64,000 nucleotides of DNA from Macrostomum lignano (taxonomy: Eukaryota): the NCBI GenBank assembly GCA_002269645.1, contig NIVC01002775.1, forward strand, positions 1 to 64,000. Reading direction: 5' to 3'. Position numbers and translations under genes: made by a program. Shown one piece after another: positions 29,823 to 64,000 of this stretch (its first letter is position 1; each line of letters opens with the position of its first letter). The notes under the pieces were generated by a model. The model made no database searches and was not told the origin of the DNA. It was given only the letters and a program-made list of their open reading frames with translations.

Positions 29823-32200
<2,378 letters not shown>

Positions 32201-39900: not shown

Positions 39901-41298
39901 AAGCATCCCCCAGATAGCAAGCATCCCCCAGATCGCAAGCATCCCCCAGATAGCAAGCATCCCCCAGATAGCAAGCATCCCCCAGATAGCAAGCATCCCC
40001 CAGATAGCAAGCATCCCCCAGATAGCAAGCATCCCCCTGATAGCAAGCATCCCCCAGATAGCAAGCATCCCCCAGATAGCAAGCATCCCCCAGATAGCAA
40101 GCATCCCCCAGATAGCAAGCATCCCCCAGATAGCAAGCATCCCCCAGATAGCAAGCATCCCCCAGATAGCAAGCATCCCCCAGATAGCAAGCATCCCCCA
40201 GATAGCAAGCATCCCCCAGATAGCAAGCATCCCCAAGATAGCAAGCTTCCCCAGATAGCAAGCATCCCCCCAGATAGCAAGCATCCACCAGATAGCAAGC
40301 ATCCCCCAGATAGCAAGCATCCCCCCAGATAGCAAGCATCCACCAGATAGCAAGCATCCCCCAGATAGCAAGCATCCCCCAGATAGCAAGCATACCCCAG
40401 ATAGCAAGCATCCCCCAGATAGCAAGCATCCCACAGACTCTACTACAGTTTTTAGGTAGAAAATTTGTTAACATTTTCCCTAGATTAAATTAAAAATAAA
40501 CTGTAGTAAATTATAATTATATTGCAACTTTAAGTATGATATGCGTAAAACGAAATTAAAACTATTTTTTTAGAAACGATTTAAAATGAATACTCTTTAA
40601 TGCCAACTACTCAACAGGCTCTAGTTTTTCTCTAGTCATTAAAAATTGAGCAAGTTAAAAAGGTGTTAGAAAACTACCTGCAAATCGCGCTCAAAGTGCA
40701 TCCGCTTCCAGCTTCCGTCGTACTGGCTGACGTCGCAGACGGGCCACCGCGCTTTGCACACGCGACGCCAATAGCCTTCGTCACGAATCAGCGGCCCGGT
40801 GACCTTCTTTGACACGTCAACTGGCAGCCGCTTCAGCAGCTTAGCCTGTTGAGCAGGGTCGACTCGGTTGACCACGTCTGAGTTGTACTCAAAATTGGCT
40901 ACGAGGCCTTTGAGACTGAGCTCGGCCAGTCCCGGCACCGTGGCCAGGTTCCACTCCGGATCCTCCGCGATGATTTTGCGGATGTTGCGCCGGTCCAGTG
41001 CCGGGTCCTCTTGAACCTCCTGCTCCGGCAGGTCCTCATCTTCGGCGGCGGCATCTGGATCGCCTCCTGCAGCGTCCTCGGCATCGCCAGCCGACGCGTC
41101 AGCCTCTTCGGCGTCTTCGTTGGCCCCGGCCTCCGTCTGCTGTCGCGTGGAACCTGCGGCCTGGCTCTGGCTCTTCTTGGAACGGCCGGAGGCGCGGGAC
41201 GGCGGCGCCTCATCGCCTTCTGCTGCTGCTTCAGCGGCCGCCGCCGTCTGGTCCGCCTCCTCGCCATCGGGAGCCGGAGTCTGCGGTTTCGACGACAT
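36912..41298 (-). CDS. TCTE1: Dynein regulatory complex subunit 5 (T-complex-associated testis-expressed 1), LRR protein, about 530 aa
   Basis: Exons 41298-40678 and 37883-36912 (phase 0). Motifs RKIIAEDPEWNLA, YWRRVCKARWPVC, GSWKRMHFER, DCGMNFEWSLF, LLDHPGLEELDLSHNSIGDRGA, DGGKQLQEGM, QESEY. Confidence 0.95.
38314..40440 (-). mobile_element. Helitron-like non-autonomous element carrying an 18 bp minisatellite (copy A, in TCTE1 intron)
   Basis: Minus strand ends TCCCTCATCGGGGGGCGAAGATTGCTAG-T. About 100 bp of unique subterminal sequence is shared with copy B and homology stops at CTAG-T. Array GGGGGATGCTTGCTATCT at 38430-40435. 5' end not defined. Confidence 0.6.
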
Positions 41299-43790: not shown

Positions 43791-44254
43791 GCTAGCTCTC
43801 CTTTTAGAAAGATTCCCAGAAGATAATACCTAAAAGATTCCCTCCACTCTGGAATGATTTCCCTCTACAAATACAACAAAAGTCTGTCAACCGTTTGGAT
43901 AAAAAAGATATTGATTTCCTTGTAGATGCTGCATGGCGTTAAACGTTTTTTATCCAATTACGTAATTCTGAGTGGCGCCTAAACCGACTAAGCAAACCGA
44001 GTGACCTACACGAGTGACAATATTCTACATTCACCTTGACAACTTGACAAATATACGCGTCAAAATGTTAATTAGCTCTTCGTAGCAATTCAGTTGGCTG
44101 TAGAGCCAGTATACGAGCTATTAACAATGGCTAAAAAATAGATAAATAGATCGTAACAGCTCTTGGTGCAATTATTTCTCAGAAATTAGAAATATATCAA
44201 GGGGACATTATTTTTACGACAAGAAAGTGATTAAATATGAACTACTCGTAAAGG

Positions 44255-46052
44255 ATGCTTACTATTTGGGGATGCTTGCTATCTGGGGGATGCTTGCTAT
44301 CTGGGGGATGCTTGCTATCTGGGGGATGCTTGCGATCTGGGGGATGCTTGCTATCTGGGGGATGCTTGCTATCCGGGAGGGGGATGCATGCTATCTGGGG
44401 GATGCTTGCTATCTGGGGGATGCTTGCTATCTGGGGGATGCTTGCAATCTGGGGGATGCTTGCTATCTGGGGGATGCTTGCTATCTGGGGGCTGCTTGCT
44501 ATCTGGGGGATGCTTGCTATCCGGGAGGGGGGATGCTTGCTATCTGGGGGATGCTTGCTATCTGGGGGCTGCTTGCTATCTGGGGGATGCTTGCTATCTG
44601 GGGGCTGCTTGCTATCTGGGGGATGCTTGCAATCTGGGGGATGCTTGCTATCTGGGGGATGCTTGCTATCTGGGGGCTGCTTGCTATCTGGGGGATGCTT
44701 GCTATCTGGGGGCTGCTTGCTATCTGGGGGATGCTTGCTATCTGGGGGCTGCTTGCTATCTGGGGGATGCTTGCTATCTGGGGGATGCTTGCTATCTGGG
44801 GGATGCTTGCTATCTGGGGGCTGCTTGCTATCTGGGGGATGCTTGCTATCTGGGGGCTGCTTGCTATCTGGGGATGCTTGCAATCTGCACGGGGGATGCT
44901 TGCTATCTGGGGGATGCTTGCAATCTGGGGGATGCTTGCTATCTGGGGGATGCTTGCTATCTGGGGGCTGCTTACTATCTGGGGGATGCTTGCTATCCGG
45001 GAGGGGGGATGCTTCCTATCTGGGGGATGCTTGCAATCTGGGGGATGCTTGCTATCTGGGGGATGCTTGCTATCTGGGGGCTGCTTGCTATCTGGGGGAT
45101 GCTTGCTATCTGGGGGATGCTTGCTATCTGGGGGCTGCTTGCTATCTGGGGGATGCTTGCTATCTGGGGGCTGCTTGCTATCTGGGGGATGCTTGCAATC
45201 TGCACGGGGGATGCTTGCTATCTGGGGGATGCTTGCAATCTGGGGGATGCTTGCTATCTGGGGGATGCTTGCTATCTGGGGGATGCTTGCTATCTGGGGG
45301 CTGCTTGCTATCTGGGGGATGCTTGCTATCTGGGGGATGCTTGCTATCTGGGGGATGCTTGCTATCTGGGGGCTGCTTGCTATCTGGGGGATGCTTGCTA
45401 TCTGGGGCTGCTTGCTATCTGGGGGATGCTTGCAATCTGCACGGGGGATGCTTGCTATCTGGGGGATGCTTGCAATCTGGGGATGCTTGCTATCTGGGGA
45501 TGCTTGCTATCTGGGGGCTGCTTACTATCTGGGGGATGCTTGCTATCCGGGAGGGGGGATGCTTCCTATCTGGGGGATGCTTGCAATCTGGGGGATGCTT
45601 GCAATCTGGGGGATGCTTGCTATCTGGGGGATGCTTGCTATCTGGGGGCTGCTTACTATCTGGGGGATGCTTGCTATCCGGGAGGGGGGATGCTTCCTAT
45701 CTGGGGGATGCTTGCAATCTGGGGGATGCTTGCTATCTGGGGGCTGCTTGCTATCTGGGGGATGCTTGCTATCCGGGAGGGGGGATGCTTGCTATCTGGG
45801 GGATGCTGCTATCTGGGGGATGCTTGCAATCTGCACGGGGGATGCTTGCTATCTGGGGGATGCTTGCAATCTGGGGGATGCTTGCTATCTGGGGGATGCT
45901 TGCTGTCTTGGGATGATTTCTTTTTGCATTACACTTTATTTGAGCAGTTTGTCTGTCGTCTTTGTGAAGGCTTTATTTGGCTGTCTTTTTGTTACTTGTA
46001 GAGAACAGAGGTTCTATCCAGATGTCCCCCAACGGGGGGCGAAGATTGCTAG
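44255..46052 (+). mobile_element. Helitron-like non-autonomous element carrying the same 18 bp minisatellite (copy B, inverted relative to A)
   Basis: Array 44260-45915, then shared unique sequence ending TCCCCCAACGGGGGGCGAAGATTGCTAG-T (CTAG 46049-46052): GC hairpin about 9 nt before CTAG, followed by T. Confidence 0.62.
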
Positions 46053-47889: not shown

Positions 47890-48430
47890 AAACTGAGGAT
47901 CTGGGAGGCTGGCCCAGCAACTGAGGATCTGGGAGGCTGGCCCAGCAACTGAGGATCTGGGAGGCTGGCCCAGCAACTGAGGATTTGAGAGGCTGGACCA
48001 CGCAACTGAAGATTTGGGAGACTGGACCAGCAACTGAAGATTTGGGAGGCTGGACCAGCAACTGAGGATTTGGGAGGCTGGCACAGCAACTGAGGATCTG
48101 GGAGGCTGGACCAGCAACTGAGGATTTGAGAGGCTGGACCACGCAACTGAAGATTTGGGAGGCTGGACCAGCAACTGAGGATTTGGGAGGCTGGCCCAGC
48201 AACTGAGGATTTGGGAGGCTGGCCCAGCAACTGAGGATCTGAGAGACTGGCCCAGCAACTGACGATCTGGGAGGCTGGCCCAGCAACTGAGGATCTGAGA
48301 GACTGGCCCAGCAACTGACGATCTGGGAGGCTGGCCCAGCAACTGAGGACCTGAGAGACTGGCCCAGCAACTGACGATCTGAGAGACTAGCTCAGCAGCT
48401 GACGATCTGGGAGGCTGACCTAAGCAACTG
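47890..48430. repeat. 28 bp minisatellite (GGAGGCTGGCCCAGCAACTGAGGATCTG)
   Basis: About 19 units; reverse complement of the 14430-15055 family. Confidence 0.95.
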
Positions 48431-48551
48431 AGGATAACTCTAAAAAATAAATACGGATAGAGAATTGTGCGCAAGCTGTATGCAAAAATCGATCAAAACA
48501 AAAGACTGGAGCACAAATGCCAGCCAAATCATGGGCTACTCGGTCAGAATG

Positions 48552-51500
48552 TCAGCTAGGCAAAATAGGAATCCGGTGCTCGCAAGCATAGTAAGAGTCC
48601 TTAGAAGTGCCAGAGGAGGACTTTGACAATTGGATACTGTCTGGCTGACAGCTGCCGAAATCAAAATTAGAAAATTTGCTAAGCAGATGAGCGGCATCGA
48701 AACTTAGCGATCGATTCTGACGATTGTCCGATGAGCCTGCGGCGTACCTGTCCGGGGATGGTGGGATTTAGTTGCTAACGGACAGTGATTACTCATCCTA
48801 ACTGGATTCTTCAAGGCACTTAAGTCCTACTATTTGTACCATAATTCTTTGCAGAGGGGGCGCCAGCTACAGAGAAGACGCCAGCTACAGAGGGGGCGCC
48901 AGCTACAGAGGGGGCGCCAGCTACAGAGGGGCGCCAGCTACAGAGGGGGCGCCAGCTACAGAGGGGACGCCAGCTACAGAGGGGGTGCCAGCTACAGAGG
49001 GGGTGCCAGCTACAGAGGGGGCGCCAGCTACAGAGGGGGCGCCAGCTACAGAGGGGGCGCCAGCTACACAGAAGACGCCAGCTACAGAGGGGGCGCCAGC
49101 TACACAGGAGACGCCAGCTACAGAGGGGGCGCCAGCTACAGAGGGGGCGCCAGCTACACAGGAGACGCCAGCTACAGATTGGCGCCAGCTACAGATTGGC
49201 GCCAGCTACAGAGGGGGCGCCAGCTACAGAGGGGGCGCCAGCTACAGAGGGGCGCCAGCTACAGAGGGGGCGCCAGCTACAGAGGGGACGCCAGCTACAG
49301 AGGGGGCGCCAGCTACAGAGGGGGCGCCAGCTACAGAGGGGGCGACAGCTACAGAGGGGACGCCAGCTACAGAGGGGGCGCCAGCTACACAGAAGACGCC
49401 AGCTACAGAGGGGCGCCAGCTACAGAGGGGGCGCCAGCTACACAGAAGACGCCAGCTACAGAGGGGCGCCAGCTACACAGGAGACGCCAGCTACAGAGGG
49501 GGCGCCAGCTACAGAGGGCACACCAGCTATATAGAAGCGACGCCGGCTACAGAGGGCTTTGATAAAGCATGAATGATCACCTGGCATTCATCAGAGTGAC
49601 GTGCAGTTTCACCCCCTCCCTGCCTGGCTGGGCCCTGGCCAATGACTGGAATTGGTCAGCCAGAGCATTAGCAATAGCTTGCAGTCTGCCTGTGGGCTCA
49701 CACAGCTGAGCGTAGAGCACTTTAGTGTCGCTCGGGTCGTCGTTCATGATTTCTAAGCCGCTCAGGCTCACGGTTAGAGGGCCGCTGGATGTTTCAATGC
49801 GAGGCGTGTCAATGATGTAGCTTAAATTCACTCTTTTAAAAAGGCATATTGCTAATTTATCTAAAAATGGCATTTTGCTAATCTATCTAAAAATGGCATA
49901 TTGCTAATCTATCTAAAAATGGCATCGCTAATTTATCTAAAAATGGCATATTGCTAATCTATCTAAAAATGGCATCGCTAATTTATCTAAAAATGGCATA
50001 TTGCTAATCTATCTAAAAATGGCATCGCTAATCTATCTAAAAATGGCATATCGCTAATCTATCTAAAAATGGCATCGCTAATCTATCTAAAAATGACATA
50101 TTGCTAATCTATCTAAAAATGGCATATCGCTAATCTATCTAAAAATGGCATATTGCTAATCTATCTAAAAATGACATATTGCTAATCTATCTAAAAATGG
50201 CATATCGCTAATCTATCTAAAAATGGCATATTGCTAATCTATCTAAAAATGACATCGCTAATTTATCTAAAAATGGCATATTGCTAATCTATCTAAAAAT
50301 GACATATTGCTAATCTATCTAAAAATGGCATATTGCTAATCTATCTAAAAATGACATATTGCTAATCTATCTAAAAATGGCATATTGCTTATCTATCTAA
50401 AAATGGCATATTGCTAATCTATCTAAAAATGGCATATTGCTAATCTATCTAAAAATGACATATTGCTAATCTATCTAAAAATGGCATATCGCTAATCTAT
50501 CTAAAAATGGCATATTGCTAATCTATCTAAAAATGACATCGCTAATTTATCTAAAAATGGCATATTGCTAATCTATCTAAAAATGACATATTGCTAATCT
50601 ATCTAAAAATGGCATATTGCTAATCTATCTAAAAATGACATATTGCTAATCTATCTAAAAATGGCATATTGCTTATCTATCTAAAAATGGCATATTGCTT
50701 ATCTATCTAAAAATGACATATTGCTAATCTATCTAAAAATGGCATATTGCTTATCTATCTAAAAATGGCATATTGCTAATCTATCTAAAAATGGCATATT
50801 GCTAATCTATCTAAAAATGGCATATTGCTAATCTATCTAAAAATGACATATTGCTAATCTATCTAAAAATGGCATATTGCTTATCTATCTAAAAATGGCA
50901 TATTGCTAATCTATCTAAAAATGGCATATTGCTAATCTATCTAAAAATGACAAGATCTCGCACCTATCCACTCGCATCAGCTCGGGCAGTCTGTCCCGGC
51001 CAAACTCGTCCAGCAGCCGCTTGGCCCTGGCCACCTCCTGGCTGGTAAGCAGGAGCAGCGGAGCGCAGGTCACGTGCAGCCTAGCGGCACCCTGGAACAC
51101 TCCATCGTTAATGCCGCGATCTCCGCCGCACCATTTCAAGGCGCTGTCGCGGAACTGCTCGTACCGATGCCTCACCGACTCCGCGGCCAAACTGATGGAT
51201 AAAAAATGCGTAATTGGCAGCCGGTCTCTCGCGTCGGCTAGCAACAATTCGATTCGAGTTTTAGCCGAAGCCAGCTGAGCTTTAGTCCTGCCCAGAGCCA
51301 GCACGGGAGACTCGGTATCTCCCATTCGAGGAATTATCAACTCTACGCCAGTTTCCGCTTCTAAGCGTCGTTTCGCGTCGCCATGACGACCGATTAGAAA
51401 TTTGTGAAACGCCGACGGAATCGGCAGTCGCAGCCGGTAGCGGCCAGTCCGATTGTCGCTGTCAATCTGACAACCGGATAGTTGCTCCTCAATTTCGTCG

Positions 51501-51739
51501 CATTTTACAGCGGCAGCGGCGACTCTACAGGTGGCCGCTTCAGCCGCGTCGTCGCCATAGCAACTATCTGGCATAGATTCGGATTCTAGCTGGCCAACTG
51601 GTCGAAGATTTTGATGCTGACGAGGCTGATTTACACTGGACAAATTGTTGCTAGGGAAAGAGTCGGCTAACGGGTTTAACCTGTAGCAATATTCTGCACC
51701 GATCCAGAGCAGTTCGGGATTCAGGGTTGCGCGACTCAT
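48552..51739 (-). CDS. ASCC1: Activating signal cointegrator 1 complex subunit 1 (KH + 2H phosphodiesterase), about 391 aa
   Basis: Exons 51739-50964, 49784-49581, 48747-48552 (1176 nt, phases consistent). KH HKFLIGRHGDAKRRLEAET, then THFLS, two LHVT 2H motifs, IMNDDP...VLYA, SFDAAHLLSKF. Confidence 0.93.
48850..49555. repeat. 17-18 bp minisatellite (GCGCCAGCTACAGAGGGG)
   Basis: About 39 units in ASCC1 intron 2. Confidence 0.95.
49845..50955. repeat. 26 bp minisatellite (GCTAATCTATCTAAAAATGGCATATT)
   Basis: About 42 units filling ASCC1 intron 1. Confidence 0.97.
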
Positions 51740-51834
51740 TCCGGCTTTTGGCAGCAAGTTGTGAGTGGGCAGCTAAATAAGTAGATTTATTGAGCCCTGC
51801 GAGCAATCAGCAGACACTTGTCTGCCGCGTAACA

Positions 51835-54170: not shown

Positions 54171-54306
54171 CGAATCAGAAATCAGGCACAGGGCATACAG
54201 AGGTGCAGAGAAAGGCCAGCCGCCAGAATTTACCTAACAAAGTCAACACGGGCTGGGCTCACAAAACAGAAAAATTAGAAACAAACAATTAAAACAAACG
54301 AATCAA

Positions 54307-57300
54307 TTAAAACCCTACGCCCACCCCTCCGGCAGCCGATCCCAGCAGGTTACTTCCGCTTCCGCCGCTACCACCTCGACCCCGGCCGAAGCCAAACGAC
54401 GGCAATGACGAATGATTCGGCGTCAAACTACCGACAGTAGAATTCGCTGTCGATGATGTGATTGGCGAACACGGCGACTGCTGCTGCCGCTGCTGCAGAG
54501 CAGCCGACGAACCGCCGCGACACCTGCCGCGACTTTGCTGGGCGCTATCAGCCTGCGGTATACGCAGACAGCTGGTAGCCGCACTCTCGTCGCTGCAGCC
54601 TGGTGCTATGTCGAATTCCAGCTCGGCTGATCGTCTAATTCCGCGGCCCCGACCGCTGTAACCGCCGCCGCCGCCAACGCTGCTGCTGGCAGTGCTGTAG
54701 CAGCTGACTGTGCTGTTGCTGCCGCTGGCATGATGAACTTCTGCTGGTTTTGAAACCGAGTTGCAGTGATTGTAAAAATTTAAATTTACTGTTGTGTCTG
54801 TGCCCTTCCCTATCCTGTCTGTGCCCTTCCCTATCCTGTCTCTGCCCTTCCCTATCCTGTCTGTGCCCTTCTCTATCCTGTCTCTGCCCTTCCCTCTCCT
54901 GTCTGTGCCCTTCCCTATCCTGTCTGTGCCCTTCCCTATTCTGTCTCTGCCCTTCCCTATCCTGTCTCTGCCCTTCCCTATCCTGTCTCTGCCCTTCCCT
55001 ATCCTGTCTGCAGAGCAGCACCTCTGATCCCTTCCCTATTCTGTCTGTGCCCTTCCCTATCCTGTCTCTGCCCTTCCCTATCCTGTCTGTGCCCTTCCCT
55101 ATCCTGTCTGTGCCCTTCCCTATCCTGTCTGTGCCCTTCCCTATCCTGTCTGTGCCCTTCCCTATCCTGTCTGTGCCCTTCCCTATCCTGTCTGTGCCCT
55201 TCCCTATCCTGTCTGTGCCCTTCCCTATCCTGTCTGTGCCCTTCCCTATCCTGTCTGTGCCCTTCCCTCTCCTGTCTCTGCCCTTCCCTATCCTGTCTCT
55301 GCCCTTCCCTATCCTGTCTCTGCCCTTCCCTCTCCTGTCTCTGCCCTTCCCTATCCTGTCTCTGCCCTTCCCTATCCTGTCTCTGCCCTTCCCTCTCCTG
55401 TCTCTGCCCTTCCCTCTCCTGTCTCTGCCTGTCCCTTCCCTGGCCCCACCTACCCCCCCCCCCGATATACCCCACCTATAACAGATTTACCATCAGGTTG
55501 TTTCACAGCGTCTCCCTTGACGTGCAGGTTGCGCATCTGATCCAGTGCAGCCTGGCTAGGAATAGAGCAGAAATAGTTGCTAGGCAGGCCGCTCTCTTCA
55601 GCTTTAGCCAACTGACTAACAAAATCTACTGATGAACTCAGGGTGGCCTTAGATACACCCAGGGTGACGTCACTTGGTAGCCTAGGCGATTTCGGAGCAG
55701 GAGCAGCAACAGAAGCAGCAACAGGAGCAGCAGCAGAGACAGACTGTTGATCTAATTTAGCGGCTGCAGATCTAGCGTGGCGCAATTTTCTACTAGTATT
55801 ACTAGCAGTAGCAGCATCAGCAACAGTAGTAGCGCCAAGAAAATTTGACCAAGGCGCAAACAGATTGCAATAGCGATGCTGCACATGTCTAGGATTATCT
55901 AGCACATCTTCGGCTTGCTGTTCGGCTAACATCCGGTCTTTACTAGCCCGGTAGACAGGGTTGAGCAGCGCTGAGAGCATCTCATTGTACAGCGGCAATA
56001 CTTGTCTGCTTTTGTCGTAGGAAGCAACAAGCAGAGCCGGGTGCAATGGCCTTCGGCGCCAGACGGCGGAGTCTTCGACTAGAAAGTCCTCCCGAGCTCG
56101 AGGCTCCTTGTAGGGATCCGGCTTGCCCAGGTAGGTCTGCATCAGACAGTAGAGACCGCGGCATGCGTGGCTGCACTTGCCATCGCTGTATAACTGCTGC
56201 AGGGTGGTTGACAGCACCTGTTGGGCGGGTGGCGGGTGGGATCGGGTTAGATGGGGATTTTTCTGTCTGAGTTTGGGAGCTATTCTCCGATCTGAGTCTG
56301 GGGCAATTCTCCCATCTGAGTCTGGGGCGATTCTCCGATCTGAGTCTGGGGCGATTATCTCCGATCTGAGTCTGGGGCGATTATCTCCGATCTGAGTCTG
56401 GGGCGATTCTCCGATCTGAGTCTGGGGCGATTCTCCGATCGGAGTCTGGAGCGATTCTCCAATCTGAGTCTGGGGCGATTCTTCGTTCTGAGTCTGGGGC
56501 GATTCTCCGATCTGAGTCTGGGGCGATTCTCCGATCGGAGTCTGGAGCGATTCTCCAATCTGAGTCTGGGGCGATTCTTCGTTCTGAGTCTGGGGCGATT
56601 CTCCGATCGGAGTCTGGAGCGATTCTCCGATCTGAGTCTGGGGCGATTCTTCGTTCTGAGTCTGGGGCGCTTCTCCGATCGGAGTCTGGGGCGATTTTTC
56701 TTGTCTTGTCTAAAGCAAATATAAGAAACGAATTACTAAACAAACCTGCAAGTCAACAAATTTGACGCTAGCATCATTGGCGCTGCAATCAAGCATGGGT
56801 AGGTGCCGTTTCAACAGCCTACAATCGTAGCTAACAACAACTAGATGTCGGTTGTAGGGCTCCCGACAAGAGCTCAGCAACTTAGCCAGACCGCTCATAG
56901 CAGCAGCCGTGCAGGAGTCTAGATCAAAGAGAAATACTCGACTATTAATATCGTTAATTGGCATAGCAACCGAGATTAGGCTAGGCCGGGAGCTGGTTTT
57001 AGCTTGGCCTCGCAGATTGCCGCCATGGCACAGCACAGCTAGTAGATCTGCGGTAGCTAAGACGGCTAGGGCCCGTTCAACGCCAATTGCCGTGGTAACT
57101 AGGATGCAATTAGCGTTCGTTGCTTCGTTGAAATTCGCGTCTGCAATGTAAAAAGAACAGCGCAAATGTAACTCAGACTTTCTTATAAAATAAATTAAAA
57201 CCAACACTGCAACATTTTAATGATTGAAAACTACTAACAGTAGTGTAACGCAAAATGCATTCCTGATTTGAATCAATGCATATTTATAATGCATATTAGC

Positions 57301-60300
57301 GACTTTCTTACCGTAGATGAATCCGTCGGGCAAGCAGCTTGTGGCGTCTACTTCGGGAAGAAGATTCAGCATGCCATGCTGATGTTTTTCGTTAGAGCCA
57401 AGAAGTATGCCGCCGTAATGTTTCGGCACTGGACACTTTGGCGGTAGGAAAGGCTTCTGTCTGAGACTGTTGTAAATTGGTTTTAAAGCTTTTTAGACAG
57501 GATAAATGCGGGGTGGATAGGCTAGAAATAGGGTAGATGGGATGGAAGTGAGGTAGATGGGGTACAAGTAGGGTAGATGGGGTAGAGGTGGGGTAGAAAT
57601 GGGGTAGAAGGGGTAGAAGTGGGGTAGATGGGGTAGAAGTGGGGTAGATGGGATAGAAGTGGGGTAGATGGGTTAGAATTAGGGTAGATGGGGTAGAAGT
57701 CTGTTAAATAGGGTAGAAGTGGGGTAGATGGGGTAGAAGTCTGTTAAATAGGGTAGAAGTGGGGTAGATGGGGTACAATGCTGGTAAATTGGGTAGAAGT
57801 GGGGAAGATGGGGTAGAAGTAGGGTAGATGGGATTTGTGATGGCCTGGGCTGGGGATCGCTCCGCAGCCCTGGCCATATGGTCTGCCGCTCCCACTGACT
57901 ATGTTTGTTTGCACTCTGTTTGTTCCCCTCACTGACTCACCGGAGTCACCCCTTCTGAACACTTCCCCCATGCTACGTATGCACCATTCGTACGCGTGTT
58001 CCATGCATCGTGCCACAGCGCGCCTGGCTATGTTGGGGCCCAGGAGCCCACAAATATATGGCAAAGCTAGACGATACGGTCTGGATTACACCTCTTATTC
58101 CTGTCTGCCACTCGGGAGCCAATTCCCAGTGCATAGCGAATCAAGACTTCGTTCTCGAGTCATTACAATGGCGACGAGTTCAGCTTTTAGCCGCATTCCG
58201 GAACTGTCCAAGGACTCCGACTTCGAAATCTACGTGGAGAGGTTGGAGCAGTACTTCGTATGCGCTAAGATTACGGAGGAAAATGCCAAGGTGGCCACGC
58301 TCAGCACTGCCATAGGAGAAGAAGCCCACACAGTACTACGAAACCTTTGCCAGCCAGAAAAGGTGGCTGACAAGTCTTATGACGACCTCAAGAAAATCCT
58401 GCAGGATCACTATGCCCCTACTCCATCCGAAATTGCGGCTCGGTTCAAGTTCCAGCAGAGGGTGCAGCTGCCGGGGGAAGACTTCGCTACTTTCCTGGCC
58501 GGGCTCAAAGCAGCCACTCTGCACTGCAACTTCGGCAACACGCTGCAGGAGAGACTGCGCGATCAAGCTGTTTTCGGCCTTCGGAGCGATGCTTTTCGCT
58601 CAAAACTGCTAGAAATCTCGAAGTTGACGTACGCGCTGATGGTCACAACGGTGTCAGCGATGGAGGCGGCGCAGCGCTACGCTAGCGAAATCGCGCCAAG
58701 AACTTCAGAGACGGTCGCAGCTATCAGCAGGGGTGCCAGCGACGGCAATGCCCATCCGCAGCAACCGATCCGCAACTCTGCCTCAGTGCACGCGCCTCAG
58801 CAGCAACCTTGCGCCGGATGCGGTGGACGTCATGATCGGCAAAGCTGCAAGTTCCGCGACGCCAAGTGTCATGCTTGCGGTAAGATGGGTCACATCCAGA
58901 AAGTCTGCAGGTCAGCCAGCGTCAAGAAGTTGGAGTCCACTGTCCACTGCACCGGCACCGGAGCAGGACGCCCAAGGCTCAATTCTTTACGTTGGACCAC
59001 GATCACGCCGATCCCTGACGGTAACGCTAGATATTGACGGTCGTAATTGCCCAATTGAGCTAGACACCGGGTCAGCCGTCACGTTGATTCCAAAGCGGAT
59101 GGCGGATGAGAGACTTCCAGGACTGCGCCTACAGCCCACCACGATGGTGCTGCGCACGTACACCAACGAGCAATTCCAACCACTGGGCGAAGCCAAAGTC
59201 TCAGTGAGCTACAATGGCCAGAACGAAATTCTTCCACTGCTCATTGTCTCCCAGGGCAATGTCGCTCTTCTTGGACGAGACTGGATGGCTCGACTAAGGT
59301 TGGACTGGCAAGCAATCGTGGCTCAGGTCAACTCGGTCAGCTCCAGCTCCGCAACCACCGACCTGATGCAGCAGTTCTCTGAAGTCTTCGCTGACGGACT
59401 TGGGTGTTATCGCCACGGCGAAGTCAAGCTGCCACGCAGGCCACGCCACGATTTTTTAAGGCCAGGCCAGTGCCTTACGCGCTGAGGGAGCGTGTGGACG
59501 AGGAGCTGAGACGACTCGAGGCCGAGGGCATCATCACGCCAATCAAGCATTCAAACTGGGCTGCTCCGATCGTCCCGGTGGTGAAAGCGAATGGCGAGAT
59601 TCGCATCTGCGGCGATTATAAGGTGACCTTTAACGCCGCGGCCAAGCCTGAGCACTATCCGTTGCCGCGGATTGAGGACATCTTCGCCAAGCTCGGCGGA
59701 GGATGCAAATGGACAAAACTCGACTTGTCGAACGCGTTCTTGCAGCTGCCACTGTCCGAGGAGAGCCGTGCCTACCTAGTCATCAACACGTCGAGAGGCC
59801 TGTTTCAACTCAACAGACTGCCCTTTGGCATTAACTCGGCCAGCGCCATCTTCCAGCGCACTCTGGAAACGCTATTGGGTGATCTCGACGGTGTCCAGGT
59901 GTTCGTTGACGATATTCTCGTTACAGGCAAGACTCAGGCGCAGCACAAACAGAACCTGACTAGAGTGCTGCAGCGTCTTCAGGACGCTGGCTTTCGACTA
60001 AACAGGGCCAAGTGCCTGTTCTTTCAAGACTCGGTGGAGTATCTCGGTCATCGAATCGACGCACACGGGCTGAAACCACTGCCTGACAAGGTCACAGCCG
60101 TGCAGAACGCACCTGCTCCAAAGGATGTCAGCCAGCTGCGCGCCTACCTGGGCATGCTAACCCATTACCTGCTGCTGTCCTCGAGTGCGCTCGTGCACTA
60201 CAACCCAGAGCTGCCACTGTACTTGGAGTGCGACGCCTCGCCATATGGACTGGGGGTGGTTCTGTCGCACAGGATCGGCGGCCAAGATCAAGCTATCGCC

Positions 60301-63300
60301 TTCGCAAGCCGCAGCCTGACGCCCGCACAGCGTAACTACTCTCAACTGGACAAAGAGGCTCTGGCCATTATGTTCGGCTTGCACAGATTTCACCAGTTCC
60401 TGTACGGGAGACGCTTCACCATCGTCACTGACCACCAGCCACTCCTTGGTCTACTGGGAGAGCGCAAGGCCATTCCGGCACGGGCTGCAGCCCGCATGCA
60501 GCGCTGGGCTATTCGGCTTTCCAGCTACGACTACAGCCTGGAGTTCAGACCGACGGTGAGGCACGGCAACTGCGACTCGCTCTCTCGCCTTCCCCTCGGT
60601 GATCAGTTCATCGAGGAGCCAGCCGTGAACTCCCTGCTCATCGAAGAAGAGGTCGGCTCGGCTCTGACTGCCAAGGTGATCGCACAGAAGACGCGGACTG
60701 ATGCGCAGCTCGGCAGGGTGCTGCTGTGTCTGCAGTCTGGCTCCCGGATCCCAGCTGCAGACGGTCTCGAAGCTTTCTCTGGCCGACAGCACGAGCTCTC
60801 AATCGAACAAGGCTGCTTGCTGTGGGGATCCAGGGTCATCGTTCCGTCGGCACTCCGCCCGATGGTCCTCGGCGAACTGCATCAAGCTCACCCTGGCGCC
60901 AGCCGCATGAGAGCGCTCGCGCGCAGCTACGTGTGGTGGCCCGGCCTGGACAAGGACGTGGAGACCTTCGTCAAGGCATGCGAAACCTGTCGGCTCAACC
61001 AGGCTGATCCGCCCAAGGCGCCAGTGCACCCATGGCCCTTCCCGCCCGAGCCGTGGTCCAGACTGCACATCGACTTTGCTGGGCCAGTGAACGGACGCAC
61101 CTTTTTGGTGCTTATCGACGCGCACAGCAAGTGGCCGGAGGTGAAGCAGCTGACCAGCATGACGTCGGCCACGACGATCAACTGTCTTCGCGAGATCTTT
61201 GCGCGCCAGGGCCTGCCGCGGACTCTGGTATCGGACAACGGAGCCCAGTTCACGTCGTCAGAATTCGCCGAGTTCTTGAGGGTCAACGGCATCGAGCACG
61301 TGACTTCAGCGCCATTCCATCCGGCGACAAACGGACAAGCTGAACGGTTCGTGAAAGTGTTAAAACAGCACCTGAAGAAATCAGGACCGTCCGAGAAAGC
61401 TCTGCAGCAATTTCTGCTCGCCTATCGCAATACGCCGCATTCAGCCACGAGCTCGGCTCCCAGCCAGCTGCTCTTCGGGCGCCGACTTCGATCCCGGCTT
61501 GATCTGCTAACGCCTTCGCTCGTCAGCAACCGGCACCAGCAGCAGCAGTCAGCGCTTCAACAGTCGCCCAGGCAAGCCAGGATGTTCCGACCTGGAGACC
61601 GAGTGCTGTTGCGAGATTACAGCACCACCACTAGCAACCGTTGGCAAGAGGGCACTGTCGAGTCTGGCGGGGCCCGAAACTGCACCGTGAGCGCAGACGG
61701 CACACTGATCAGCTGCTATCGCTGCCAGCCCGCGGCTCCGAGACACCGGCGCACCTGCCTGCCGCTGCCGCTGCCGCTGCCGAGATCGCGGCCACAGCCC
61801 CACCAGCGGCCCAGCCGCAGGACGACTCGGACGACGGACACTCGGCTGCCGGCGGCATCCCGGCACCAGGAGTGGATCCGCCGGCCCGGCGATACCCCCA
61901 GCGCACCCCCATGAACACTTCCCCCATGCTACGTATGCACCATTCGTACGCGTGTTCCATGCATCGTGCCACAGCGCGCCTGGCTATGTTGGGGCCCAGG
62001 AGCCCACAAATATATGGCAAAGCTAGACGATACGGTCTGGATTACACCTCTTATTCCTGTCTGCCACTCGGGAGCCAATTCCCAGTGCATGGCGAATCAA
62101 GACTTCGTTCTCGAGTCATTACAGGATTTCTATGGAGTAGATGGGGTAGAAGTGGGGTAGATGGGGTAGAAGTGGGGTAGATGGGGTAGAAGTGAGGTAG
62201 ATGGGTTAGAATTGGGGTAGATGGGATAAACCTGGAAAAAAGCGAGGAAAGGTCACGGTAGATCCAAGTGATGAGGTTAGGAGTGTTGGGTAAATTACAT
62301 ATACAAATTAAATAACCAGTTAAAATTTGGGTTATGATCCAAAGGCATCGATCGAATTCTTGACTACATTCGAGTTAAGCCTCACCCAAAATTGTTTTGC
62401 CGCGCTGCAGCTGGTTCTTCGCTCGCCGTGCGGGACCCCGGACTTGAGCAGGTCAAGCGGCTCTCAGTGGCGGCGGCGGCGGCAGCGGCAGTGGCCGAGG
62501 ATTCAATGGACGATTCACCACAACTGCTGCAACTTTCCGGATCCGACATCTCTTCGGAGACGAGCACTAAAAAAACCGGTAAAATTAGAATTTAAAAAAT
62601 GATTCTAGCTACAGAACAATTCGAACTTCAGTTACCTACAAATGACGATCCATCTAGTCATCTAGTGAGCACCCTGCTGCTTCCATCTAGTCATCTAGTG
62701 AGCACCCTGCTGCTTCCATCTAGTCATCTAGTGAGCACCCTGCTGCTTCCATCTAGTCATCTAGTGAGCACCCTGCTGCTTCCATCTAGTCATCTAGTGA
62801 GCACCCTGCTGCTTCCATCTAGTCATCTAGTGAGCACCCTGCTGCTTCCATCTAGTCATCTAGTGAGCACCCTGCTGCTTCCATCTAGTCATCTAGTGAG
62901 CACCCTGCTGCTTCCATCTAGTCATCTAGTGAGCACCCTGCTGCTTCCATCTAGTCATCTAGTGAGCACCCTGCTGCTTTCATCTAGTCATCTAGTGAGC
63001 ACCCTGCTGCTTCCATCTAGTCATCTAGTGAGCACCCTGCTGCTTCCATCTAGTCATCTAGTGAGCACCCTGCTGCTTTCATCTAGTCATCTAGTGAGCA
63101 CCCTGCTGCTTTCATCTAGTCATCTAGTGAGCACCCTGCTGCTTTCATCTAGTCATCTAGTGAGCACCCTGCTGCTTCCATCTAATGGACATCTGCTCTG
63201 CTTAAGTAGTAAACAGTTGCTACCCACATCCAGAGTCTCGGTCTCCATATCACACTCACACTTAGAAACCTGATCCAAAGGCACGCAAACCTTGCCGATG

Positions 63301-63431
63301 TATCTTCCATTTTCGTCTCGAGCATCGTACAGCTCAAATTGAAAATCATTTGTCATCTTTCGAAAGAAACCAGTGTAGGACTGGCTGTCCGAGTCCAGAA
63401 CAACTAGACTGCCTCGCCCTGGTAGCTCCAT
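54307..63431 (-). CDS. EXD1: EXD1-like 3'-5' exonuclease-domain protein (piRNA-pathway type, probably catalytically inactive), about 700 aa
   Basis: Exons 63431-63224, 62566-62386, 57466-57312, 57140-56746, 56217-55491, 54743-54307 (2103 nt, phases 1,2,1,0,1 consistent, ACCATGG start). EXD1/Egalitarian-like motifs RVFLFDL, VSYDCRLL, FVDLQV, VWRRRPLHPALL, LPLY. Exon 1 donor (G|GTAGCA) is weak. Confidence 0.72.
54795..55440. repeat. 21 bp minisatellite (CCCTTCCCTATCCTGTCTGTG)
   Basis: About 30 units in the last EXD1-like intron, interrupted once near 55010-55025. Confidence 0.95.
56270..56700. repeat. 24 bp minisatellite (GAGTCTGGGGCGATTCTCCGATCT)
   Basis: About 18 units in EXD1-like intron 4. 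Confidence 0.95.
57505..57835. repeat. G-rich minisatellite (GGGGTAGAAGTGGGGTAGAT), resumes at 62124-62225
   Basis: The same array lies on both sides of the LTR element, so it is the pre-insertion target. Confidence 0.9.
58168..61914 (+). pseudogene. Disrupted gag-pol of the LTR element
   Basis: ATG 58168. A 7 bp duplication TCCACTG (58936-58949) and a frameshift near 59433 break the reading frame. In-frame loss of the RT-RNase H connector at about 60168. Frameshifting deletion near 61708. Confidence 0.88.
58169..58178 (+). other. Primer-binding site, complementary to the tRNA-Ser(GCU) 3' end
   Basis: TGGCGACGAG one base after the 5' LTR end; tRNA identity from recalled 3' sequence ...CUCGUCGCCA. 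Confidence 0.65.
62645..63190. repeat. 33 bp minisatellite (CATCTAGTCATCTAGTGAGCACCCTGCTGCTTC)
   Basis: About 16 near-identical units in EXD1-like intron 1. Confidence 0.96.
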
Positions 63432-63489: not shown

Positions 63490-64000
63490 GCCCAGCAACT
63501 GACACTCTGGGAGGCTGGCCCAGCAACTGAGGATCTGGGAGGCTGGCCCAGCAACTGAGGATCTGGGAGGCTGGCCCAGCAACTGAGGATCTGGGAGGCT
63601 GGCCCAGCAACTGAGGATCTGGGAGGCTGGCCCAGCAACTGAGGATCTGGGAGGCTGGCCCAGCAACTGGGGATCTGGGAGGCTGGCCTAGCAACTGAGG
63701 ATCTGGGAGGCTGGCCCAGCAACTGACACTCTGGGAGGCTGGCCGTCAACTTTGGATCTTGGAGGGTGGCCTAGCAACTGGGGATCTGGGAGGCTGGCCC
63801 AGCAACTGAGTATCTGGGAGGCTGGCCTAGCAACTGGGGATCTGGGAGGCTGGCCCAGCAACTGAGTATCTGGGAGGCTGGCCTAGCAACTGAGGATCTG
63901 GGAGGCTGCGCTAACATTTGAGGATCTGGGAGGCTGGCCCAGCAACTGGGGATCTGGGAGGCTGCGCTAGCAACTGAGGATCTTGGAGGGTGGCCTAGCA
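63490..64000. repeat. 28 bp minisatellite (third site of the GGAGGCTGGCCCAGCAACTGAGGATCTG family)
   Basis: About 18 units running off the window end, about 60 bp upstream of the EXD1-like ATG. Confidence 0.95.

What the first reader, a model, noticed from the sequence alone, without database searches (positions are those of the whole stretch)
57467..62385. Young Gypsy element inserted antisense in an intron of an EXD1-like piRNA-pathway gene
Seen: exon 62566-62386 (ends GG|GTGAG) splices in phase to exon 57466-57312, so the whole plus-strand LTR element lies in intron 2 of a minus-strand gene. Established: EXD1 works with TDRD12 in piRNA biogenesis. Inference: each host pre-mRNA carries 4.3 kb of antisense transposon RNA in the cells where the pathway operates, a possible piRNA trap or feedback link. 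Alternatively the insertion impairs a silencing gene.
Basis: partly seen in the sequence, partly recalled or inferred. Interest (0 to 1): 0.7.

Follow-up and report, generated by a model that had tools for sequence, protein, structure and literature searches.

The report
Defective Gypsy copy in EXD1-like intron
A recently inserted but already broken Gypsy-type retrotransposon lies backwards inside an intron of a flatworm (Macrostomum lignano) gene that does look like the piRNA factor EXD1; in a genome that is one-fifth LTR retrotransposon this is an ordinary passenger, and the proposed piRNA feedback is untested.

Summary
The window is Macrostomum lignano DNA. A six-exon minus-strand gene (CDS 63431-54306) matches an annotated protein at 100% identity. 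Its intron 2 (62385-57467) contains a plus-strand Ty3/Gypsy element (57836-62123) flanked by a GGATT duplication. Joining the flanks restores a 20-nt minisatellite in register.

'Young' is only half right. The shared LTR parts differ at 1 of 212 bases, but the copy is defective. Relatives have one gag-pol reading frame; here it is split by two frameshifts. A conserved 39-residue stretch of pol is missing. The 3' LTR lacks its first 120 nt and any purine tract.

'EXD1-like' is supported, though only by targeted profiles. Pfam and an exhaustive phmmer search find nothing. An EXD1 profile matches the whole exonuclease-like domain (hhalign 88%, E 3e-6; hmmsearch p 3e-8). The N-terminus matches EXD1 Lsm domains in register. 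The four DEDD positions read L, H, L, K.

The piRNA-trap idea cannot be tested here and has a high chance background: LTR retrotransposons are 21% of this genome. I rate this a new member of a known kind, of low interest.

The parts
57467..62385 (-). Intron 2 of the host gene (4919 nt). It consists of a 20-nt minisatellite interrupted by the LTR element.
   Evidence: The GT donor (62385-62384) and AG acceptor (57468-57467) are read directly. The junction QNNFG|LRQKPF is present in annotated protein P0001.
57836..62123 (+). Ty3/Gypsy LTR retrotransposon copy (4288 nt), antisense to the host gene and defective.
   Evidence: Pfam finds Retrotrans_gag, zf-CCHC, aspartyl protease, RVT_1, RT_RNaseH, Integrase_H2C2 and rve, in that order. 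3729 relatives were found; the closest is M. lignano P0004, 70% identical in pol.
57831..57835 (.). Left copy of the 5-bp target-site duplication GGATT.
62124..62128 (.). Right copy of the 5-bp target-site duplication GGATT.
   Evidence: The joined flanks keep the minisatellite register.
57836..58167 (+). 5' LTR, 332 nt, with termini TGTGATG...CATTACA. The first 120 nt (57836-57955) have no partner at the 3' end.
   Evidence: The terminal inverted repeat matches at 6 of 7 positions, read. The 120 nt are unique in the window.
61912..62123 (+). 3' LTR remnant: only the last 212 nt of the LTR. It differs from the 5' copy at one position (58135 A versus 62091 G). No purine tract precedes it.
58168..58935 (+). 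gag part of the single gag-pol frame (frame 1). The Met codon directly abuts the LTR, and a PBS-like TGGCGACGAG overlaps the ATG. A CCHC knuckle is present.
   Evidence: BLASTP to P0004 residues 1-279, 50% identity, both proteins starting MATSSA. Pfam.
58936..58951 (+). Frameshift 1 (frame 1 to frame 2), not in a homopolymer.
   Evidence: The P0004 alignment leaves the gag frame at 58935 and resumes in the next frame at 58952.
58952..59431 (+). Protease segment, read in frame 2.
   Evidence: BLASTP to P0004 residues 285-445, 50% identity. Pfam aspartyl protease hits, all weak and below the curated cut-offs.
59419..59431 (+). Frameshift 2 (back to frame 1): a short deletion, not a multiple of three and not in a homopolymer.
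59419..61914 (+). RT, RNase H and integrase segment (frame 1). An in-frame 39-codon gap lies at about 60168/60169. The frame runs into the 3' LTR remnant before it reaches a stop.
   Evidence: Pfam E-values 5e-32 to 7e-16. The gap after LGMLTHY is absent from six relatives. The C-terminal tail still aligns to P0123 up to 61907.
57500..57835 (.). Left part of the 20-nt minisatellite (unit GGGGTAGATGGGGTAGAAGT) into which the element inserted.
62129..62240 (.). Right part of the same minisatellite.
63260..63431 (-). Host exon 1 (coding part, ATG at 63431-63429). It encodes the Lsm-like N-terminal domain.
   Evidence: tblastn of P0001 and P0002, 100% identity. Sequence. Lsm matches. AF2 predicts five beta strands at pLDDT about 95.
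62386..62566 (-). Host exon 2 (low-complexity linker).
57312..57466 (-). Host exon 3, with an alternative acceptor at 57460.
   Evidence: P0001 versus P0002.
56746..57140 (-). Host exon 4: first half of the exonuclease-like domain (the degenerate DxE site, RVFLFDL, SYDCR, and VDLQV in place of FDTQV).
55491..56217 (-). Host exon 5: second half of the exonuclease-like domain (the WRRRPL motif and the helices after it) and the start of the tail.
54306..54740 (-). Host exon 6: low-complexity C-terminal tail and the stop codon (TAA at 54308-54306).

Best explanation
This is an ordinary transposon insertion. A Ty3/Gypsy LTR retrotransposon integrated recently into a 20-nt minisatellite inside intron 2 of a six-exon Macrostomum lignano gene. 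It belongs to the compact metazoan type with a single gag-pol frame, whose database relatives are named 'K02A2.6-like'. Integration duplicated GGATT, and the element lies opposite to the gene. The copy cannot transpose on its own: it has two frameshifts, has lost 39 conserved pol residues, and has a 3' LTR that lacks its first 120 nt and the plus-strand primer tract. Shown: the exon structure, the boundaries, the lesions, and that annotated mRNAs join exon 2 to exon 3. Inferred: the element is transcribed only as part of the host intron and is removed by splicing without consequence. Also inferred: most lesions were inherited from a defective source copy moved in trans, and the 3' LTR truncation arose after integration. 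The host protein is a very divergent EXD1-like protein, with an N-terminal Lsm-like domain, a disordered linker, a catalytically dead DEDD exonuclease-like domain and a low-complexity tail. By analogy with silkworm and mouse EXD1 it would act as an RNA-binding partner of TDRD12 in piRNA biogenesis.
For: Gene model: the spliced product is 100% identical to P0001 over 481 residues. All six exons map to the minus strand. The annotation is genome-guided RNA-seq (PMC5730564). Insertion: GGATT is on both sides and the empty-site join restores the minisatellite register. LTR termini are TGTGATG...CATTACA. The shared LTR parts are 211/212 identical. Family: Pfam domain order and 3729 relatives, mostly single proteins of about 1300 residues. 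Defects: the P0004 alignment switches frame at about 58936-58951 and at about 59419-59431. The 39-residue gap is absent from six relatives. The first 120 nt of the 5' LTR are unique in the window. Tolerance: no AATAAA or ATTAAA on either strand inside the element. Base rate: LTR retrotransposons are 21% and tandem repeats 15% of the genome; 1928 LTR-RT copies in 137 families are known, mostly Ty3/Mdg4 (PMC12801592). EXD1-likeness: hhalign against 20 EXD1s gives probability 88.5%, E 2.8e-6, 184 columns covering the whole domain. hmmsearch with the EXD1 HMM gives 19.3 bits, p 2.9e-8. Twenty EXD1-family hits (the named ones are vertebrate) score above the Drosophila Egalitarian fragment. N-terminal residues 11-50 match EXD1 residues 13-54 at p 1.2e-6, and many other lepidopteran EXD1 N-termini match in the same register. 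The DEDD columns read L, H, L, K. The AF2 model's top PDB match is BmExd1.
Against: No expression or small-RNA data were available, so 'no consequence' is an inference from base rates and from the annotated splice. Transcripts could come from an identical or near-identical duplicate locus without the insertion; the assembly is highly redundant. The frameshifts could be assembly errors, although neither lies in a homopolymer. The EXD1 assignment is weak by generic methods. Pfam finds nothing. Exhaustive phmmer against 1.84 billion representatives finds only Macrostomum fragments. Silkworm EXD1 itself scores only 0.4 bits. The Lsm profile comparisons are marginal or negative. The confident AF2 model used an alignment made mostly of EXD1s, so it is not independent, and RNase D, Nibbler and Egalitarian follow closely in Foldseek.
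Confidence: 0.75

Rival explanations
1. The host pre-mRNA carries antisense element RNA in piRNA-competent cells and is processed into antisense piRNAs against this family. That would couple transposon surveillance to expression of a piRNA-pathway gene.
For: The geometry is right: 4288 nt of antisense element lie inside a transcribed intron. M. lignano has an active piRNA pathway with ping-pong and mostly antisense Macpiwi1-bound piRNAs, and about 1300 piRNA-producing transcripts lie outside clusters (PMC4604429). The host gene is EXD1-like.
Against: There is no small-RNA evidence. The same geometry holds for any antisense intronic element in a genome that is 21% LTR retrotransposon. Annotated mRNAs splice the intron out. 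From general knowledge, genic piRNAs come mainly from exons and 3' UTRs, or from unspliced cluster transcripts. The closest annotated relative is only 70% identical in pol, so an active family for such piRNAs to act on has not been shown. No expression data place this gene in the germline or neoblasts (one search found no paper naming it).
Confidence: 0.06
2. The insertion damages this gene copy. It could do so through piRNA-guided or other heterochromatin on the element, slower elongation, or cryptic splicing, and so lower output of a silencing factor.
For: The intron grew about eightfold, from 626 to 4919 nt. From general knowledge, transposon-targeted chromatin silencing spreading into host genes is known in Drosophila.
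Against: The annotated transcripts P0001 and P0002 join exon 2 to exon 3 correctly. There is no polyadenylation hexamer on either strand inside the element. From general knowledge, antisense is the orientation usually tolerated in introns. A 97%-identical paralogue or allele (P0003) exists and the assembly is highly duplicated, so dosage is buffered.
Confidence: 0.1
3. The host gene is not an EXD1 orthologue. It would be another member of the inactive exonuclease-like group, Egalitarian-like or lineage-specific, with no role in piRNA biogenesis.
For: Pfam and exhaustive phmmer find nothing. The Drosophila Egalitarian fragment scores 9.6 bits against 0.4 bits for silkworm EXD1. Foldseek E-values for RNase D, Nibbler and Egalitarian are within about 20-fold of EXD1. 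The Lsm profile tests are marginal.
Against: The EXD1 profile covers the whole domain. Twenty EXD1-family hits score above the Egalitarian fragment, up to 19.1 bits. The N-terminal domain matches EXD1 Lsm domains in register, and the domain order is that of EXD1 (PMC4712191). The Egalitarian fragment keeps the D-x-E motif (DCEG), which is lost here.
Confidence: 0.2
4. The defects, or the insertion itself, are assembly artefacts of a repeat-rich, long-read-based draft.
For: The genome assembly is described as difficult and redundant. An LTR asymmetry of exactly 120 nt is unusual.
Against: Neither frameshift lies in a homopolymer. The 117-nt gap is in frame and clean. The target-site duplication and the minisatellite register fit a true integration.
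Confidence: 0.07

Closest known systems
Metazoan Ty3/Gypsy (Ty3/Mdg4) LTR retrotransposons with one gag-pol reading frame, named 'K02A2.6-like' in databases; the Mag clade is the commonest such group in M. lignano
   Same: The domain order is gag (CCHC), protease, RT, RNase H, integrase. The element is compact, about 4.3 kb. It has TG...CA LTR ends and a 5-bp target duplication. It is 70% identical in pol to M. lignano P0004 and 46-52% identical to fish, urchin and other copies.
   Different: This copy has two frameshifts, a 39-residue pol deletion and a truncated 3' LTR without a purine tract. No annotated protein is more than 70% identical. Assignment to a clade (Mag, Gmr1 or another) was not tested by phylogeny.
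EXD1 (exonuclease 3'-5' domain-containing 1), the partner of TDRD12 in the PET complex; structures PDB 5FIQ and 5FIS (PMC4712191)
   Same: It has an N-terminal Lsm-like domain, then an exonuclease-like domain with the DEDD residues lost, then a C-terminal tail as in mouse. It shares the motifs RV(F/Y)LFD, (H/Y)DCR, D-x-QV and W-x-x-RP.
   Different: It is only about 20% identical. It is missed by Pfam PF01612, which detects most of the EXD1 hits retrieved. A disordered linker of about 100 residues separates the two domains. The DEDD positions read L, H, L, K, against S, D, L, N in silkworm and A, E, L, E in mouse. Binding to TDRD12, dimerisation and RNA binding are untested.
Egalitarian exonuclease-like domain (Drosophila mRNA-localisation adaptor)
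   Same: It is the closest sister domain of EXD1 by sequence. It shares the HDCR and FDTQ motifs and gives a Foldseek hit at E 6e-8.
   Different: The PDB entries show the Egalitarian domain at residues 555-702 of a 1012-residue chain, not behind an N-terminal Lsm domain. It keeps the D-x-E motif. It scores lower than twenty EXD1-family hits.
Antisense intronic transposon insertions and genic or unistrand piRNA sources, such as the Drosophila flamenco locus (from general knowledge)
   Same: A host-strand transcript carries transposon sequence in antisense.
   Different: There is a single element in a normally spliced intron, not an array. No small-RNA evidence was available here.

Membership tests
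Ty3/Gypsy LTR retrotransposon | pol domain order protease - RT - RNase H - integrase (integrase after RT) | tested here: met
   Pfam hits lie in that order along 58733-61914. RVT_1, RT_RNaseH, Integrase_H2C2 and rve have E-values from 5e-32 to 7e-16; the protease hits are weak.
Ty3/Gypsy LTR retrotransposon | Two direct long terminal repeats with TG...CA ends | tested here: met
   The repeats 57956-58167 and 61912-62123 are 211/212 identical. The full 5' LTR, 57836-58167, has ends TGTGATG...CATTACA. The 3' copy is truncated by 120 nt at its 5' side.
Ty3/Gypsy LTR retrotransposon | Short target-site duplication | tested here: met
   GGATT is on both sides, and the joined flanks restore the minisatellite register.
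Ty3/Gypsy LTR retrotransposon | Primer-binding site after the 5' LTR and polypurine tract before the 3' LTR | tested here: inconclusive
   A TGG-initiated PBS-like stretch (TGGCGACGAG) starts one base after the LTR and overlaps the gag ATG. No tRNA was available for comparison. No purine tract precedes the 3' LTR remnant, probably because it was deleted.
Autonomous (intact) element | Uninterrupted gag-pol reading frame, as in relatives | tested here: not met
   There are two frame changes and a 39-residue gap relative to P0004 and other relatives.
EXD1 | Central DEDD-type 3'-5' exonuclease-like domain homologous to that of EXD1 | tested here: met
   hhalign gives probability 88.5%, E 2.8e-6, 184 columns. 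hmmsearch with the EXD1 HMM gives 19.3 bits, p 2.9e-8. Pairwise phmmer reaches 19.1 bits. The generic Pfam PF01612 model does not hit.
EXD1 | Catalytic D-E-D-D residues not conserved (inactive nuclease) | tested here: met
   The aligned columns read L, H, L, K. The reference states are S, D, L, N in silkworm and A, E, L, E in mouse (PMC4712191). The last column is uncertain by one or two residues.
EXD1 | N-terminal non-canonical Lsm domain (the TDRD12-binding module) | tested here: inconclusive
   In favour: phmmer of residues 1-64 hits EXD1 N-termini in register, best p 1.2e-6. AF2 with an EXD1-containing alignment predicts five beta strands at pLDDT about 95. Weak or against: hhalign gives E 0.0097 and probability 4%, and the Lsm HMM gives no hit.
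EXD1 | C-terminal three-helix dimerisation hook and homodimer formation | not testable with these tools
   Helices follow the core in the model, but no multimer prediction or experiment was possible.
EXD1 | Association with TDRD12 and a PIWI protein; role in piRNA biogenesis | not testable with these tools
   This needs co-immunoprecipitation or knock-down in M. lignano.
EXD1 | Closer to EXD1 than to sister families (Egalitarian, Nibbler/Mut-7, Rrp6/RNase D) | tested here: inconclusive
   The EXD1-family hits retrieved score above one Egalitarian fragment, and EXD1 is the top Foldseek hit. However, silkworm EXD1 scores below Egalitarian, no profiles of the sister families were available, and the model depends on the alignment used.
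piRNA source locus (cluster or genic trap) | Strand-biased 1U small RNAs of 28-32 nt mapping to the locus | not testable with these tools
   No read data are held here. Published libraries exist (PMC4604429).

The most novel reading that the evidence does not exclude
The antisense element in intron 2 turns part of the EXD1-like pre-mRNA pool into a piRNA precursor. Alternatively, it draws piRNA-guided chromatin silencing onto the gene. Either way, the output of a piRNA-biogenesis factor would become coupled to the activity of one Gypsy family, giving a self-regulating loop in a flatworm whose piRNA pathway also operates in somatic stem cells.
Probability: 0.04. Interest if true: 0.6.

Novelty: new member of a known kind. 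Interest (0 to 1): 0.2.

Why it matters
It matters little as it stands. An antisense LTR retrotransposon in an intron is expected many times over in a genome that is 21% LTR retrotransposon, and this copy is dead. Two minor points are useful. First, M. lignano appears to carry an extremely divergent EXD1-like gene that standard domain searches miss, and I found no paper describing EXD1 in flatworms. That suggests the PET-complex branch of piRNA biogenesis may exist in flatworms, where the pathway also acts in stem cells. Second, the insertion is recent and sits in a duplicated gene, so it could serve as a presence/absence marker between copies or strains. The feedback idea would be interesting only if small-RNA data showed it.

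Tried and rejected
1. Pfam on the host protein gave no family, even at E up to 10.

2. phmmer against the PDB gave only a non-significant Rrp6 hit.

3. Exhaustive phmmer against 1.84 billion representatives gave only seven Macrostomum fragments, so no diverse alignment could be built from true relatives.

4. AF2 on the single sequence gave pLDDT 35, which is unusable.

5. A profile of the EXD1 Lsm domain gave marginal or no signal. Only pairwise matches to lepidopteran N-termini were informative.

6. I considered that the real LTR is just the 212-nt repeat, with the element starting at 57956. I rejected this because the bases before 57956 (CCTTC) do not match GGATT. The 120 nt are not minisatellite. 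The register is restored only with 57836 as the boundary. The terminal inverted repeat fits 57836 (6 of 7 positions) and not 57956 (3 of 7).

7. I considered that the three reading frames reflect programmed frameshifting. I rejected this because the relatives have one continuous frame and the pattern here is frame 1, then 2, then 1.

8. The mechanical ORF start at 57901 lies inside the LTR. The true Met is at 58168, as in P0004.

9. tRNA and Rfam scans of the region found nothing.

10. Literature searches for the gene identifier and for EXD1 in flatworms returned nothing useful.

11. The long ORFs with 'Hexapep' hits at 38-46 kb are translated 18-nt repeats, not genes.

12. I did not fetch the genomic locus of the closest full-length relative (P0004). 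That would have stored a second complete element, so the comparison used proteins only.

Full report
**What the window is.** It is 100% identical over all 481 residues to the NCBI protein 'hypothetical protein BOX15_Mlig030152g1, partial' of the free-living flatworm Macrostomum lignano (P0001). UniProt names two further forms '3'-5' exonuclease domain-containing protein'. P0002 is the same sequence with alternative splicing. P0003 is 97% identical and is a second copy or allele.

**The gene model.** tblastn and direct reading place the coding sequence in six minus-strand exons:
- exon 1: 63431-63260
- exon 2: 62566-62386
- exon 3: 57466-57312
- exon 4: 57140-56746
- exon 5: 56217-55491
- exon 6: 54740-54306

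P0002 shows a second acceptor 6 nt further in (QNNFG|QKPF). The species' annotation is genome-guided RNA-seq assembly (PMC5730564). The exon 2-exon 3 junction therefore has transcript support. In this redundant assembly, however, the reads could come from a duplicate locus.

**The insertion.** Intron 2 (62385-57467, 4919 nt) consists of a 20-nt minisatellite interrupted by a plus-strand element at 57836-62123. GGATT lies on both sides. When I join the flanks and remove one GGATT, the ten-mer register of the minisatellite runs straight through the junction: 37 mismatches over 30 ten-mers, against 127 or more in any other register. The intron shrinks to 626 nt. These are therefore the true integration boundaries.

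**What kind of element it is.** Pfam finds gag with a CCHC knuckle, an aspartyl protease, RT, RNase H, the integrase zinc domain and the integrase core, in the Gypsy order. A protein search with the pol frame finds 3729 relatives. The closest is a 1320-residue M. lignano protein (P0004, 70% identity). The rest are single proteins of about 1300 residues from elements of about 4.2 kb in fish, sea urchin and many unnamed assemblies, often named 'K02A2.6-like'. In M. lignano such elements are abundant. A recent survey lists 1928 LTR retrotransposon copies in 137 families, mostly Ty3/Mdg4 and above all the Mag clade (PMC12801592). LTR retrotransposons make up 21% of the genome and tandem repeats 15% (PMC5730564).

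**Young, but not intact.** The two LTR copies share 212 nt with one difference (58135 A, 62091 G), which fits a recent integration. The copy nevertheless carries four lesions.
1. Relatives have one continuous gag-pol frame, but this copy reads in frames 1, 2 and 1. Alignment to P0004 leaves the gag frame at 58935 and resumes one frame over at 58952. It returns to the first frame at about 59419-59431.
2. Neither of these two frameshift sites is a homopolymer, so a long-read indel error is not the obvious cause.
3. Thirty-nine conserved residues between RT and RNase H are missing after LGMLTHY, at about nt 60168/60169. All six relatives I aligned have them.
4. The 5' LTR is 332 nt (57836-58167, ends TGTGATG...CATTACA), but the 3' copy keeps only the last 212 nt. 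The first 120 nt are unique in the window. No purine tract precedes the 3' remnant, and the pol frame runs into it.

The pol tail still aligns to a relative up to 61907, nine residues short of that relative's end. I infer that a deletion of roughly 150-250 nt removed the end of pol, the plus-strand primer tract and the start of the 3' LTR. Both LTRs are copied from one template during reverse transcription, so this asymmetry must have arisen after integration. With only one LTR substitution, the other lesions were more probably inherited from a defective source copy. That is inference.

The gag Met codon is the first base after the LTR, and a PBS-like TGGCGACGAG overlaps it. P0004 starts with the same MATSSA. 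The element has no AATAAA or ATTAAA on either strand, so it offers the host transcript no canonical polyadenylation hexamer.

**Is the host gene EXD1-like? What generic tools say.** Pfam gives no family even at E up to 10. phmmer against the PDB gives only a non-significant Rrp6 hit around SAVWRRRPL. An exhaustive phmmer search of 1.84 billion representatives returns only seven Macrostomum fragments.

**Defining EXD1 and collecting real sequences.** I took the definition of EXD1 from Yang et al. 2016 (PMC4712191): an N-terminal Lsm domain that binds TDRD12; a central DEDD-type domain whose catalytic residues are lost (S, D, L, N in silkworm; A, E, L, E in mouse); a C-terminal dimerisation hook; and a long tail in mouse. 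To obtain real EXD1 sequences I used a remembered human-like fragment purely as bait. It hit silkworm EXD1 (5FIQ/5FIS) at E 5e-26 and Egalitarian at 1e-14. A profile search then returned 161 database proteins, most of the named ones labelled EXD1.

**Profile and pairwise results for the exonuclease-like domain.**
- hhalign of the Macrostomum family against 20 EXD1s gives probability 88.5%, E 2.8e-6. It aligns 184 columns, which is the whole exonuclease-like domain (residues 193-397).
- hmmsearch with an EXD1 HMM gives 19.3 bits, p 2.9e-8 for the single comparison.
- In pairwise phmmer, twenty EXD1-family hits (the named ones vertebrate) score 9.8-19.1 bits. The Drosophila Egalitarian fragment scores 9.6 bits and silkworm EXD1 only 0.4 bits.

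**The N-terminus and the catalytic positions.** The first 64 residues match the N-terminal Lsm domain of lepidopteran EXD1s in the same register, best p 1.2e-6 with Macrostomum 11-50 against EXD1 13-54. A mixed Lsm profile was marginal or negative. In a joint alignment the four DEDD columns read L, H, L, K. The motifs RVFLFDL, SYDCR, D-x-QV and W-x-x-RP line up with the family's RV(Y/F)LFDI, HDCR, FDTQV and W-x-x-RP.

**Structure prediction.** AF2 on the single sequence failed (pLDDT 35). With the EXD1-containing alignment it gave five beta strands at pLDDT about 95 for residues 1-60, a disordered linker at 64-165, and a confident exonuclease-like fold at 170-410. The top PDB matches of that model are silkworm EXD1 (E 3e-9, TM 0.65-0.68 on the target). 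T. brucei RNase D, Nibbler and Egalitarian follow closely. This model is not independent of the alignment used to build it.

**Verdict on the gene.** The gene is EXD1-like in both domains, in their order, and in the loss of catalytic residues. I put about 0.75-0.8 on membership. An Egalitarian-like or lineage-specific dead exonuclease is the rival.

**The functional idea.** M. lignano has a working piRNA pathway with ping-pong and antisense-biased Macpiwi1 piRNAs. Some 1300 piRNA-producing transcripts lie outside clusters (PMC4604429), so the trap idea is not absurd. Nothing in the sequence favours it, though. The intron is spliced in annotated mRNAs. The same antisense geometry applies to any intronic element in a genome that is one-fifth LTR retrotransposon. 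The copy is dead. No annotated relative above 70% identity was found. I found no paper naming this gene, and none on EXD1 in flatworms beyond a passing mention. The rival idea, that the insertion harms the gene, is equally untested. It is softened by correct splicing, by the lack of polyadenylation hexamers, and by the existence of a second copy.

**Overall verdict.** The structural interpretation is largely right, with the correction that the element is defective. The gene identification is supported at remote-homology level. The feedback hypothesis remains speculation with a low prior. This is an ordinary insertion: a new member of known kinds, and of low interest.

**Handling of the element.** I read and searched it only in pieces.

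Noticed in passing
window 57836-57955 versus 61792-61911: The 5' LTR carries 120 nt that the 3' LTR lacks. CACCCC lies just before the shared part on both sides (57946-57951 and about 61902-61907), which may be microhomology at a deletion junction.
   Followed up: partly
window 58165-58185: The gag ATG is the first base after the 5' LTR, and the PBS-like TGGCGACGAGTTC encodes the first residues (MATSS). The closest relative, P0004, starts with the same residues, so primer-binding site and start codon seem to overlap in this lineage.
   Followed up: partly
window 57460-57468 (minus strand): There are two acceptors 6 nt apart (cag|TCTCAG|ACAG). They give protein forms with and without Leu-Arg (P0001 versus P0002).
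   Followed up: yes
window 62649-63184, 57500-57835 with 62129-62240, 56266-56696, 54795-55436: Four of the five introns of the host gene contain a minisatellite, with units of 33, 20, 24 and 21 nt. Only the 171-nt intron 3 has none.
   Followed up: partly
window 14443-15055, 47891-48435, 63490-64000: The same 28-nt minisatellite unit (AGATCCTCAGTTGCTGGGCCAGCCTCCC or its reverse complement) occurs at three separate places in the window, one of them just upstream of the host gene.
   Followed up: no
window 38437-40437 and 44253-45912: Two arrays of an 18-nt unit, each about 2 kb, are reverse complements of each other and lie about 4 kb apart. The long ORFs across them, with Pfam 'Hexapep' hits, are translated repeats and not genes.
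   Followed up: partly
window 25634-27216: A 1.6-kb array of a 20-nt unit (AAGTGGATAGATGAGTGGGG) resembles the unit of the intron-2 minisatellite (GGGGTAGATGGGGTAGAAGT).
   Followed up: no
window 15527-21371 (+): ORF pieces carry the WDHD1 first WD40 domain, Mcl1_mid and Ctf4_C domains. They look like exons of a WDHD1/Ctf4 (AND-1)-like replication gene.
   Followed up: no
window 50915-51757 (-): An ORF with a KH domain followed by an AKAP7-type 2'-5' RNA ligase-like domain, an ASCC1-like architecture, lies just downstream of the host gene on the same strand.
   Followed up: no
window 31073-31906: A near-perfect (TAAC)n microsatellite of about 208 copies.
   Followed up: no
host protein residues 64-165 (exons 2-3) and 480-687 (exons 5-6): A disordered linker of about 100 residues separates the Lsm-like and exonuclease-like domains. 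A long Ala/Ser/Gly/Gln-rich tail ending in RG/GS repeats follows the domain. The tail is reminiscent of the mouse EXD1 tail rather than of the short silkworm protein.
   Followed up: partly
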